Below are positions 21,346-22,275 of a stretch of DNA of 64,000 nucleotides, one piece after another. The DNA comes from Octopus bimaculoides (taxonomy: Eukaryota). Below the pieces are notes generated by a model. It made no database searches and was not told the DNA's origin. It saw only the letters and a list, made by a program, of their open reading frames with translations. The DNA is taken from contig NC_068991.1 in NCBI RefSeq assembly GCF_001194135.2, forward strand, positions 6,986,780 to 7,050,779, read 5' to 3'. The position numbers and the translations under genes are program-made. Positions within the stretch are counted from its first letter, which is position 1, and each line of letters starts with the position of its first letter.

Positions 21346-21796
21346 CTGTAGCCCACATTGTTACTGAGAATTCGCCTTCTAAAGTTTTGATCTGTACTTG
21401 CTTTTGTTCCCATTTCTTCGTAGCAGAGTTAGTGTCTAGCGTCAGTTCTCCACAATTTACAGCTGATGTCGATATCATATTTCGTGATTTATTGGCTCGT
21501 CTCTTACCACCTTTGCCTTTCCGGGTGATGGTCGCTTCTTCTGTGGATATTTCAATCTCTGGAGCTGGTACGGGGATGCTGTCAGCATACACGAGGTTCG
21601 GATCACCAACCACCTCCTCACGAGTCTGCAGAACAATCTCTTCTTGGGCCGCTTCAGGTAATGGCTGTAGAGCAATCATAGGTTGTACTTCGACTGTATC
21701 GTCTGTTGTTTCCACAGTCTCAATAGGCATTTCAACAGGGATAGACTCCACTTCAACCTCTTGGATCTCCACTTCTGATCCTATAACCGACGCCAT
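21346..21796 (-). CDS. YY1: YY1 transcription factor, coding exon 1 (acidic N-terminus and REPO domain)
   Basis: Encodes MASVIGSEV...PMIALQPL...LQTREEVVG...[24 protein letters not shown], with motifs matching YY1/Pho. Ends at donor ACAG|GTTTGT, phase 1 (451 nt). Confidence 0.97.
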
Positions 21797-22193
21797 TTTG
21801 ACTGCTTTCTTTCTATGACGCTTATGCTACACAGAAGTCGGAATCTCACTAACAAGACCACGTGACACACGCAGACACACACAAACACAAACACACTCAC
21901 ACATACACAAACTACAGCTAATGAATATTCATGATTTTGTTGCTGCTGCTGCTGCTTTTTGCTGGTAATTATTAACTTGCAGTTTCTTCTGTCCATCACT
22001 TAGAATTCATCCATTGAATGTAACGGTTAGTAAATTGAATCCGGCCCTTCTTTGATTAGTATTATTTTAAATTACAACATCTAACATCTGAAAGTTTTCG
22101 TTTCTTAGCGCATGAATTTATTTTTTTTCTATTTAACTTCTTTTTTTTTTCTTTCATGAAATTTCACCAGGATTTAGCAGATTCTGAAACACT
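21797..22193. promoter_or_regulatory. Shared divergent promoter and 5'UTR region of YY1 and DEGS
   Basis: 397 bp between divergent start codons must hold both 5'UTRs and the promoter(s), unless the UTRs overlap the opposite gene. TSS positions are not visible. Confidence 0.8.
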
Positions 22194-22275
22194 ATGGGTG
22201 CCAAAGTTTCTAGGACAGATTTTGAATGGTCTTACACCCAAGAACCACATGCTTCACGAAGAAAAGCAATAATGG
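22194..22275 (+). CDS. DEGS1: Sphingolipid delta4-desaturase (DEGS1/2 family) exon 1 (not in the ORF track)
   Basis: Encodes [27 protein letters not shown] plus G|gtaagg (82 nt). Matches the DEGS N-terminal Lipid_DES motif, with Gly2 as a potential myristoylation site. Confidence 0.95.

What the first reader, a model, noticed from the sequence alone, without database searches (positions are those of the whole stretch)
21796..22194. YY1 and DEGS are head to head with only 397 bp between start codons, possibly the same pair as vertebrate YY1-DEGS2
Seen: divergent ATGs at 21796 (-) and 22194 (+) in a genome region whose introns run to 14 kb, and no transposon lies between them. Known, from memory and needing verification: human DEGS2 and YY1 are divergently oriented neighbours on 14q32. 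Inference: an ancient microsyntenic pair held together by a bidirectional promoter, coupling a Polycomb/INO80-linked transcription factor to ceramide synthesis. This stands out because coleoid genomes are known for extensive loss of ancestral microsynteny.
Basis: partly seen in the sequence, partly recalled or inferred. Interest (0 to 1): 0.8.

Follow-up and report, generated by a model that had tools for sequence, protein, structure and literature searches.

The report
Ancient head-to-head YY1–DEGS gene pair
In this octopus sequence the genes for the transcription factor YY1 and the ceramide-making enzyme DEGS start 397 bases apart and point away from each other, a neighbour arrangement seen across most animal phyla sampled; it is a clean new example of a known kind of conserved gene pair.

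Summary
The window is Octopus bimaculoides. YY1 starts at 21796 (-) and DEGS at 22194 (+). The 397 bp between them hold no gene or transposon.

The pair is old:
- The same head-to-head layout occurs in O. vulgaris (418 bp), a cuttlefish (RNA contig, 1047 nt), the limpet Patella (373 bp), the brachiopod Lingula (205 bp), Priapulus (2.4 kb) and Capitella (4.8 kb, with an insertion).
- Accession or locus-tag adjacency supports it in bivalves, other gastropods, Owenia and myriapods.
- Saccoglossus keeps the two genes linked.
- Papers give the order DEGS2-YY1-SLC25A29 in human and platypus contigs, and list the three together on woodpecker chromosome 5.
- The pair is broken in amphioxus, a crinoid and at least one insect.

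In the cuttlefish, independently assembled mRNAs of the two genes have 5' ends about 200 nt apart, and one contig bridges them. That supports a bidirectional promoter.

The conserved motifs sit on the YY1 side: an E-box, a YY1 site over the start codon, and a YY1-site cluster in intron 1. They persist in species where DEGS has moved away, so they are YY1's own module.

A functional link between Polycomb and ceramide synthesis is unsupported. The premise that coleoids lost most ancestral microsynteny is overstated. Verdict: new member of a known kind, moderate interest.

The parts
21346..21796 (-). YY1 coding exon 1. Start codon at 21796-21794; includes the REPO motif; GT donor at 21345-21344.
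   Evidence: ORF and sequence. 100% identical over 151 aa to O. bimaculoides YY1 P0121.
21797..22193 (.). 397-bp spacer between the two start codons; the putative divergent promoter region with both 5'UTRs.
   Evidence: Against O. vulgaris the YY1-proximal part 21797-21918 is 97-100% identical, the part 21996-22138 is 65-85%, and the noncoding background is 83-90%.
21791..21799 (-). YY1-consensus site AAAATGGCG spanning the YY1 start codon.
   Evidence: 3 matches in 64 kb, all at the YY1 5' end. The same CAA[A/G/C]ATGGCGTC context occurs in all 9 species compared.
21859..21864 (.). E-box CACGTG (TCACGTGGTC on the YY1 strand), 63-68 nt upstream of the YY1 ATG.
   Evidence: Present 56-88 nt upstream of the YY1 ATG in 8 of 9 species compared. 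In a shuffle test on 8 sequences (7 with the E-box) the chance of an E-box in that window was at most 1% per sequence.
21921..21932 (.). Perfect palindrome ATGAATATTCAT; binding factor unknown.
   Evidence: Shared with O. vulgaris, the cuttlefish (ATGAATATTTAT), Capitella (two copies), the crinoid, and partly Patella.
21864..21956 (.). Low-complexity DNA: CA-rich microsatellite 21864-21912 and (TGC)5 at 21941-21956.
   Evidence: Tandem Repeats Finder.
22121..22170 (+). Pyrimidine tract followed by cag|G at 22168-22171. It looks like a 3' splice site 23 nt before the DEGS ATG, so a short 5'UTR intron is possible. Donor-like GGTAAT at about 21966. Unverified.
   Evidence: Read; conserved in O. 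vulgaris. No transcript data for octopus.
22194..22275 (+). DEGS coding exon 1 ([12 protein letters not shown]..., Lipid_DES N-terminal motif).
36246..36988 (+). DEGS coding exon 2, carrying the three histidine boxes HEIAH, HLEHH and HNEHH.
   Evidence: Pfam FA_desaturase E=5e-24.
38943..39089 (+). DEGS coding exon 3 with the stop codon. An alternative terminal exon lies at about 43064-43105, as used in the O. vulgaris 333-aa model.
20955..21015 (.). Cluster of YY1-consensus sites in both orientations at the start of YY1 intron 1, 750-850 nt after the ATG.
   Evidence: 96-97% identical to O. vulgaris. Present at the same position in Patella, Lingula, Priapulus, Capitella, amphioxus and a crinoid.
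2603..16200 (-). Remaining YY1 coding exons, with approximate bounds: 16046-16200, alternative 14294-14365, 12367-12441, 11278-11439 (zinc fingers 1-2), 10008-10181 (zinc fingers 3-4), 9702-9770, 2603-2674.
   Evidence: tblastn of P0121 on the window; splice sites; zinc-finger region matches human YY1 structure 1UBD.

Best explanation
This is an ancestral bilaterian head-to-head gene pair, YY1 and the single invertebrate DEGS, retained in octopus with a 397-bp spacer that acts as a compact divergent (bidirectional) promoter region.

Shown:
- Both gene identities.
- The spacing.
- The same adjacency and orientation in several protostome phyla.
- Linkage in a hemichordate and in vertebrates.

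Supported in a relative: in a cuttlefish the two mRNA populations begin about 200 nt apart, point outwards, and are bridged by RNA reads.

Inferred for octopus: both transcription starts lie inside, or overlap, the 397 bp.

The constrained sequence is YY1's own promoter module. It comprises a YY1 site over the start codon, an E-box about 65 nt upstream, a palindrome about 130 nt upstream, and the YY1-site cluster at the start of intron 1. The most likely reading is that the DEGS start sits in the open chromatin created by this broadly active, self-regulated YY1 promoter. Any breakpoint inside so short a spacer would damage one or both promoters. That would explain why the pair survives where the spacer is short and decays where it has been stretched or the genome is heavily rearranged. 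No functional link between the two proteins is implied.
For: Gene identity.

Spacer and lack of insertions.

Gap between the two ATGs, head to head:
- O. vulgaris 418 bp.
- Patella 373 bp.
- Lingula 205 bp.
- Priapulus 2430 bp.
- Capitella 4781 bp, with a gag-like ORF inserted.

Consecutive accessions or locus tags:
- Sinanodonta 036633/036634, Nucella 050895/050896 and Strigamia T1IWV7/T1IWV8 are consecutive; Chamberlinius 009454/009457 are three apart.
- Owenia CAH1791660/61, Dreissena XP_052271054/55 and KAH3859231/32, Haliotis rufescens and H. rubra two apart.

Cuttlefish transcripts:
- Contig L014 carries both spliced coding sequences.
- YY1 mRNA 5' ends from 4 runs fall at L014 2871-2910.
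- DEGS mRNA 5' ends from 9 runs fall at 3101-3264, six of them at 3101-3139.

Vertebrate evidence: DEGS2 and YY1 are consecutive in the human and platypus lists, and DEGS2, YY1 and SLC25A29 are listed together on woodpecker chromosome 5 (PMC3985205, PMC2042987, PMC10198635).

Motif conservation.

The general framework, that 5'-5' conserved pairs with short spacers are enriched among ancient microsyntenic pairs, comes from PMC3514665.
Against: - No transcription start site was mapped in octopus. A splice-acceptor-like site 23 nt before the DEGS ATG leaves room for an upstream non-coding exon.
- Ends of assembled RNA contigs are not mapped start sites.
- In cuttlefish the conserved YY1-side motifs lie inside a 5'UTR of about 640 nt, not between the two 5' ends. 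They may therefore not be the shared promoter elements.
- The same motifs persist in amphioxus and a crinoid, where no DEGS lies within 10 kb. YY1's promoter therefore does not need DEGS.
- Linkage persists in Saccoglossus, 8.7 kb apart with apparently tandem orientation, though across a scaffold gap.
- From memory, human DEGS2 and YY1 are about 80 kb apart, and they are absent from a list of human divergent pairs under 1 kb. A shared core promoter cannot be the only thing keeping them together.
- Co-expression was not tested.
Confidence: 0.75

Rival explanations
1. Regulatory-block (bystander) model. The pair is kept together because long-range enhancers of the developmental regulator YY1 lie in or beyond DEGS (or the reverse), not because the core promoters are shared. 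On this view the short spacer in molluscs and brachiopods is incidental compaction.
For: - Linkage survives where a shared core promoter is impossible or unlikely: Saccoglossus at 8.7 kb with tandem orientation in the scaffold, and vertebrate neighbours that are not in the human list of divergent pairs under 1 kb.
- Irimia et al. describe this as the second main cause of conserved pairs (PMC3514665).
- DEGS intron 1 is 14 kb in octopus, which leaves room for such elements.
Against: - No conserved non-coding peak stands out in DEGS intron 1 between the two octopus species. Identity there is 82-90% and peaks are confined to the YY1 5' end.
- Four lineages keep the spacer under 0.5 kb, which fits promoter sharing better.
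- Amphioxus and the crinoid lost the linkage yet kept the YY1 promoter module intact.
Confidence: 0.15
2. Neutral survival. The adjacency is an unselected remnant of the ancestral gene order that has not yet been broken in slowly rearranging lineages, and the short spacer carries two independent promoters.
For: - The pair is broken in several lineages without obvious harm: amphioxus, a crinoid, and Cotesia, where the two genes are on different contigs. From memory, Drosophila pho is on chromosome 4 and ifc on 2L.
- The DEGS-proximal half of the spacer evolves at or below background conservation between the two octopuses.
Against: - The pair is retained in at least five phyla by direct sequence (Mollusca, Brachiopoda, Annelida, Priapulida, Hemichordata). 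Arthropoda (myriapods) is supported only by accession or locus-tag order, and Chordata (vertebrates) only by the literature.
- Orientation is the same in every protostome for which sequence was read.
- It is retained even in the heavily rearranged coleoid genomes.
- Cuttlefish transcripts from the two genes abut or overlap.
Confidence: 0.08
3. Assembly or annotation artefact: the two genes are not really adjacent in octopus.
For: The window has six N gaps, one of them 1 kb downstream of DEGS exon 1 at 23266-23452.
Against: There is no gap between the two first exons. An independent O. vulgaris assembly is collinear through the region at about 89-100% identity. A cuttlefish RNA contig joins the two genes.
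Confidence: 0.01

Closest known systems
Conserved ancestral microsyntenic pairs (CAMPs) of Irimia et al. 2012, Genome Res 22:2356 (PMC3514665)
   Same: Two unrelated genes are adjacent in distant animal phyla, mostly in 5'-5' orientation with a short spacer. The paper attributes this to shared promoters or interleaved regulation.
   Different: YY1-DEGS is not named in that paper's main text, and its supplementary list is not held here. I therefore cannot say whether the pair is already listed. The cephalopod, brachiopod and priapulid evidence comes from genomes sequenced later.
HSPD1-HSPE1 (HSP60/HSP10) bidirectional pair
   Same: A head-to-head pair with a spacer under 1 kb, conserved across animals and cited as the textbook case of a shared bidirectional promoter.
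   Different: HSPD1 and HSPE1 are subunits of one machine and are tightly co-expressed. YY1 and DEGS have no known functional relation, and their pair has been stretched or broken in several lineages.
Human DEGS2-YY1 neighbours at 14q32.2
   Same: The two genes are orthologous to the octopus pair, DEGS2 being one of the two vertebrate DEGS paralogues. Published gene lists read EVL, DEGS2, YY1, SLC25A29, WARS in human and put DEGS2 and YY1 consecutively in platypus contigs; a woodpecker study lists DEGS2, YY1 and SLC25A29 together on chromosome 5.
   Different: From memory, the two starts are about 80 kb apart and divergent. The pair is not in a human list of divergent pairs under 1 kb. There is therefore no shared core promoter in human. 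I could not check orientation with these tools.
YY1 intron-1 autoregulatory cluster (Kim, Yu and Kim 2009, PMC2743690)
   Same: A cluster of consensus YY1 sites in opposite orientations at the very start of YY1 intron 1. In mouse, the paper reports that YY1 binds the cluster and that it is needed for promoter activity and feedback. The octopus has such a cluster at 20955-21015.
   Different: The paper found the cluster only in deuterostomes and none in Drosophila pho, and concluded it arose after the vertebrate-invertebrate split. Here it is present in a mollusc, a brachiopod, an annelid and a priapulid. Binding and feedback are untested in any of them.

Membership tests
Bidirectional (divergent) promoter gene pair | Two genes on opposite strands, 5' ends facing | tested here: met
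   YY1 ATG at 21796 (-) and DEGS ATG at 22194 (+).
Bidirectional (divergent) promoter gene pair | Transcription start sites less than 1 kb apart | tested here: inconclusive
   In octopus, only the 397-bp gap between the ATGs is known, and a possible 5'UTR intron cannot be excluded. In cuttlefish, mRNA contig 5' ends lie about 200 nt apart and one contig bridges them. Contig ends are not mapped start sites.
Bidirectional (divergent) promoter gene pair | No other gene or mobile element between the two starts | tested here: met
   Only microsatellites and a T-rich tract are present.
Bidirectional (divergent) promoter gene pair | Correlated expression, and promoter activity in both directions from one fragment | not testable with these tools
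   No expression or reporter data are available here.
Conserved ancestral microsyntenic pair (sensu Irimia et al. 2012) | Orthologues of both genes adjacent in distantly related phyla, including protostomes and deuterostomes | tested here: met
   Direct sequence evidence in Octopus (two species), cuttlefish, Patella, Lingula, Capitella, Priapulus and Saccoglossus. Accession or locus-tag order in bivalves, Haliotis, Nucella, Owenia and myriapods. Vertebrates from papers.
Conserved ancestral microsyntenic pair (sensu Irimia et al. 2012) | Conserved relative orientation | tested here: inconclusive
   The orientation is 5'-5' in every protostome read. Saccoglossus appears tandem, but a 50-N scaffold gap lies between the genes. 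Vertebrate orientation is from memory only.
YY1/Pho transcription factor | Four C-terminal C2H2 zinc fingers of YY1 type, and the REPO motif | tested here: met
   Zinc-finger exons are 98-100% identical to YY1 of other phyla. Residues 242-361 match human YY1 zinc-finger structure 1UBD in a single stretch at 271 bits. [22 protein letters not shown] is in exon 1; the REPO definition is from memory.
Sphingolipid delta-4 desaturase (DEGS/DES1/ifc) | Lipid_DES N-terminal domain, FA_desaturase domain and three histidine boxes | tested here: met
   Pfam PF08557 E=5e-22 and PF00487 E=5e-24. HEIAH, HLEHH and HNEHH are in exon 2. 60-70% identical to DES1 of many phyla. Enzyme activity was not tested.
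YY1 intron-1 autoregulatory site cluster | Several consensus YY1 sites in opposing orientations at the start of intron 1 | tested here: met
   The window has sites at 20962, 20988, 21002 and 21005. These are four of the five matches to the combined site patterns in 64 kb; taken alone, AANATGGCG gives 3 matches against 0.8 expected by chance. The position is the same in six other species.
YY1 intron-1 autoregulatory site cluster | YY1 binds the sites and they mediate feedback on YY1 transcription | not testable with these tools
   The paper reports this only for mouse tissue and cultured cell lines (PMC2743690).

The most novel reading that the evidence does not exclude
The YY1 promoter module (YY1 site at the ATG, E-box, intron-1 YY1-site cluster) and the DEGS start form one selected regulatory unit more than 550 million years old. 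On this reading YY1's self-regulation also sets DEGS transcription, tying the level of a global chromatin regulator to dihydroceramide desaturation. That shared control, rather than mere fragility of a short spacer, would be why the pair survives even in rearranged coleoid genomes.
Probability: 0.1. Interest if true: 0.6.

Novelty: new member of a known kind. Interest (0 to 1): 0.4.

Why it matters
The pair is a well-documented example of a two-gene neighbourhood that has outlasted most of animal evolution. It survives even in cephalopods, whose chromosomes were extensively reshuffled.

The spacer is tiny, and one partner is a transcription factor with binding sites for itself beside it. This makes the locus a convenient natural test of whether promoter sharing, rather than protein function, preserves gene order.

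As a by-product, YY1's intron-1 site cluster and its promoter motif layout turn out to be shared by protostomes and deuterostomes. This revises the published view that the cluster arose on the vertebrate side. It also identifies one of the oldest recognisable promoter-proximal motif arrangements in animals.

Tried and rejected
- **Sponge test of pre-bilaterian origin.** The look-up of Dysidea DEGS found no record, so cnidarians, sponges and placozoans remain untested.
- **Prior report of the pair.** No paper in the library combines DEGS2, YY1 and synteny apart from an imprinting map. Supplements of Irimia 2012 and of the regulatory-block paper are not held. The cephalopod microsynteny supplement lists blocks of three or more genes only and does not list the pair.
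- **Spacer alignment, cuttlefish against octopus.** The score is not above shuffles (46 against 35 ± 6, maximum 59). Only short motifs are shared, so I make no claim of overall spacer conservation beyond the genus.
- **Third block member.** An FHA/dsRBD gene follows DEGS in Lingula and Priapulus. tblastx found nothing in window 39-64 kb or 1-9.7 kb.
- **Minus-strand 152-aa 'gene' on the cuttlefish YY1 contigs.** I suspected DEGS exon 1, but it is a spurious ORF in purine-rich 5'UTR.
- **Assembly artefact.** Rejected.
- **Teleost check of DEGS2 orientation.** Not attempted.
- **Contig-length comparison for insects and spiders.** This is weak evidence, because the contig length shown may belong to another member of the cluster. 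I rely only on Cotesia (clusters of one and two sequences) and, from memory, Drosophila.
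Full report
**1. What is in the window**

The window is Octopus bimaculoides. On the minus strand an ATG at 21796 opens [23 protein letters not shown]..., which runs to a GT donor after 21346. An in-frame TAG lies 12 codons upstream. This exon holds [22 protein letters not shown], the REPO motif of YY1/Pho as I recall its definition.

tblastn with the O. bimaculoides YY1 protein P0121 (XP_014781459.1) matches this exon at 100%. It places the other coding exons at about 16046-16200, 14294-14365 (alternative), 12367-12441, 11278-11439, 10008-10181, 9702-9770 and 2603-2674. 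The zinc-finger region matches the human YY1 structure 1UBD in one stretch at 271 bits.

On the plus strand an ATG at 22194 opens [12 protein letters not shown].... With exons 22194-22275, 36246-36988 and 38943-39089 the product is 323 aa. It is identical to O. bimaculoides DES1 XP_014781463.1. It carries Lipid_DES and FA_desaturase domains and three histidine boxes. DEGS intron 1 is 13,970 bp.

The spacer 21797-22193 is 397 bp. It contains only a CA-rich microsatellite, (TGC)5 and a T-rich tract.

**2. The adjacency is real**

An independent chromosome-scale O. vulgaris assembly has YY1 exon 1 ending 418 bp from the DEGS ATG. It is collinear with the window across the whole region. O. sinensis accessions for the two genes are consecutive, and Argonauta has both on one 17.7-Mb contig.

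**3. How old the pair is**

I fetched the DNA around DEGS or YY1 orthologues and located both genes by tblastn. In each locus the queried gene's ATG is at position 10001.

| Species | Result |
|---|---|
| Patella vulgata | YY1 ATG at 9627 (-), gap 373 bp |
| Lingula anatina | YY1 ATG at 9795 (-), gap 205 bp |
| Priapulus caudatus | YY1 ATG at 7570 (-), gap 2430 bp |
| Capitella teleta | YY1 ATG at 5219 (-), gap 4781 bp; spacer holds a gag-like 369-aa ORF and an unsupported gene model |
| Saccoglossus kowalevskii | YY1 zinc-finger exons 8.7 kb upstream of DEGS on the same strand; a 50-N scaffold gap lies between, so the orientation is not secure |
| Branchiostoma | No partner within 10 kb of DEGS or of YY1 |
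| Anneissia (crinoid) | No DEGS within 10 kb of YY1 |

Consecutive accessions or locus tags indicate adjacency in these species:
- Sinanodonta, Nucella, Strigamia and, three tags apart, Chamberlinius.
- Owenia, Dreissena, Haliotis rufescens and H. rubra.

Lottia, Aplysia, Mactra, Tubulanus, Glandiceps and Ptychodera have both genes on a sequence of the same length. This is consistent with a shared scaffold or chromosome but does not prove adjacency.

In Cotesia the two genes are on different contigs. From memory, Drosophila pho and ifc are on different chromosomes.

For vertebrates, papers list EVL, DEGS2, YY1, SLC25A29, WARS in order in human (PMC3985205). DEGS2 then YY1 then SLC25A29 appear on platypus contigs mapping with chicken chromosome 5 (PMC2042987). 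DEGS2, YY1 and SLC25A29 appear together on woodpecker chromosome 5 (PMC10198635). Human orientation (divergent, about 80 kb apart) rests on my memory.

The pair therefore dates at least to the protostome-deuterostome ancestor. It has been lost several times. Non-bilaterians could not be tested.

**4. Transcript evidence for a divergent promoter**

A Logan RNA-seq contig (L014, run SRR8281693) encodes a YY1 identical to that of Sepia/Acanthosepion pharaonis. It carries both fully spliced coding sequences head to head, with 1047 nt between the ATGs.

Contigs from other runs are at least 99.86% identical to L014 and collinear with it:
- Four YY1 mRNAs end at L014 positions 2871-2910, giving a 5'UTR of about 600-640 nt.
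- Nine DEGS mRNAs begin at 3101-3264, six of them at 3101-3139.

The two sets of 5' ends are thus about 200 nt apart and point outwards. In one run reads bridge them. This is what a bidirectional promoter looks like in assembled RNA data, but contig ends are not mapped start sites.

For octopus no transcripts were available. A pyrimidine tract plus cag|G lies 23 nt before the DEGS ATG, and a donor-like GGTAAT sits near 21966. A short leader intron is therefore possible.

**5. Anatomy of the spacer**

Noncoding background identity between the two octopuses is 83-90%.

| Region | Identity | Note |
|---|---|---|
| 21797-21918 | 97-100% | YY1-proximal part of the spacer |
| 21996-22138 | 65-85% | DEGS-proximal part, with a 17-bp indel |
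| 20920-21240 | 95-99% | First 400 bp of YY1 intron 1 |

The conserved YY1-side sequence holds three motifs:
- A YY1-consensus site spanning the start codon (AAAATGGCG, 21791-21799).
- An E-box (21859-21864).
- The palindrome ATGAATATTCAT (21921-21932).

Nine species were compared: two octopuses, cuttlefish, Patella, Lingula, Priapulus, Capitella, amphioxus and a crinoid.
- The start codon sits in CAA[A/G/C]ATGGCGTC in all nine.
- (T)CACGTG(A) lies 56-88 nt upstream in eight of nine. A shuffle test on eight of these sequences, seven of them with the E-box, gave at most 1% chance per sequence.
- The palindrome recurs in cuttlefish, Capitella and the crinoid, and partly in Patella.

Amphioxus and the crinoid keep these motifs without DEGS nearby. 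The motifs are therefore YY1's own promoter grammar, not something created by the pairing.

**6. The intron-1 cluster**

Four of the five matches in the 64-kb window to the combined YY1-site patterns fall at 20962-21012, in both orientations. This is 750-850 nt after the ATG. The same cluster sits at the same distance in Patella, Lingula, Priapulus, Capitella, amphioxus and the crinoid.

Kim et al. 2009 reported that in mouse this cluster binds YY1 and mediates feedback on YY1 transcription. They found it in vertebrates, sea squirt, amphioxus and sea urchin but not in Drosophila pho. They concluded it arose after the vertebrate-invertebrate split (PMC2743690). The protostome copies found here argue that it is ancestral to bilaterians and was lost in flies.

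**7. Most likely mechanism and rivals**

Most likely (0.75): this is an ancestral head-to-head pair whose short spacer is a divergent promoter region. The DEGS start lies next to the constrained, broadly active, self-regulated YY1 promoter. Breakpoints inside such a spacer are selected against, which preserves the pair.

The adjacency, its age and the cuttlefish transcript geometry are shown. Promoter sharing in octopus, and selection as the cause of retention, are inferred.

The main rival (0.15) is a regulatory-block model with long-range YY1 elements in or beyond DEGS. It would better explain the vertebrate and Saccoglossus linkage at a distance. No conserved intronic peaks support it here.

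Neutral survival (0.08) fits the repeated losses but not the breadth and tightness of retention.

An artefact is excluded.

Nothing supports a functional coupling of Polycomb/INO80 to ceramide synthesis.

**8. Comparison with what is known**

The phenomenon is that of the conserved ancestral microsyntenic pairs of Irimia et al. 2012. These are enriched for 5'-5' orientation and spacers under 1 kb, with HSPD1-HSPE1 as the model case.

I found no paper naming YY1-DEGS as such a pair. The supplementary list where it might appear is not held. The pair is absent from a list of human divergent pairs under 1 kb. This is consistent with the two genes being too far apart in human, as I recall them to be.

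Euprymna keeps 275 metazoan blocks, against 216 in a scallop (PMC9023564).

**9. Verdict**

This is a new, well-supported member of a known kind. It comes with a useful side result on the age of YY1's promoter and autoregulatory elements. Interest is 0.4.

Noticed in passing
window 20955-21015; also L002 8815-8866, L004 9018-9031, L007 6729-6792, L003 4419-4422, L008 10750-10980, L009 10804-11063: A cluster of consensus YY1 sites in both orientations lies at the start of YY1 intron 1, at the same distance from the ATG in octopus, limpet, brachiopod, priapulid, annelid, amphioxus and crinoid. The published account (PMC2743690) knew it only from deuterostomes and dated it after the vertebrate-invertebrate split. 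Its presence in protostomes makes it bilaterian-ancestral.
   Followed up: partly
window 21791-21932; matching upstream regions of L001, L002, L004, L007, L008, L009, L014: The YY1 promoter layout is deeply conserved. The start codon is embedded in a YY1-type site (CAA[A/G/C]ATGGCGTC) in 9 of 9 species. An E-box (T)CACGTG(A) lies 56-88 nt upstream in 8 of 9. The palindrome ATGAATATTCAT occurs in several species; from memory it resembles both a two-unit heat-shock element and a POU-dimer site, and its factor is unknown.
   Followed up: partly
L004 14311-22723 and L007 16951-25486: In both Lingula and Priapulus a gene with FHA plus double-stranded-RNA-binding/Dicer-dimer domains lies tail to tail just downstream of DEGS. 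It may be a third member of the ancestral block. tblastx did not find it in the octopus window.
   Followed up: partly
L014 2270-2910 (cuttlefish RNA contig) and L010-L013: The cuttlefish YY1 mRNA has an unusually long (about 600-640 nt), purine-rich 5'UTR. The conserved E-box and palindrome lie inside it, about 500 nt downstream of the apparent 5' end. This raises the possibility of two YY1 start sites, or of elements that act after initiation.
   Followed up: no
window 43064-43105 and 14294-14365: Alternative exons: a second possible DEGS terminal exon, used in the O. vulgaris 333-aa model, and a 24-codon cassette exon of YY1 present in isoform X1 only.
   Followed up: no
L003 5554-6663: The stretched 4.8-kb YY1-DEGS spacer of Capitella holds a 369-aa ORF with a CCHC zinc-knuckle-like motif (weak Pfam hit, below cut-off). 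This suggests a retroelement insertion widened an originally short spacer.
   Followed up: partly
L002 27823-28101: In Patella a second, weaker DEGS-like match (residues 213-317, 44% identity) lies 7.5 kb downstream of the main exon, at the annotated gene's end. It may be a duplicated or alternative 3' exon.
   Followed up: no
L005 4967-5016: The Saccoglossus scaffold has a 50-N gap between YY1 and DEGS, so the apparent tandem (non-divergent) orientation there may be a scaffolding error.
   Followed up: partly
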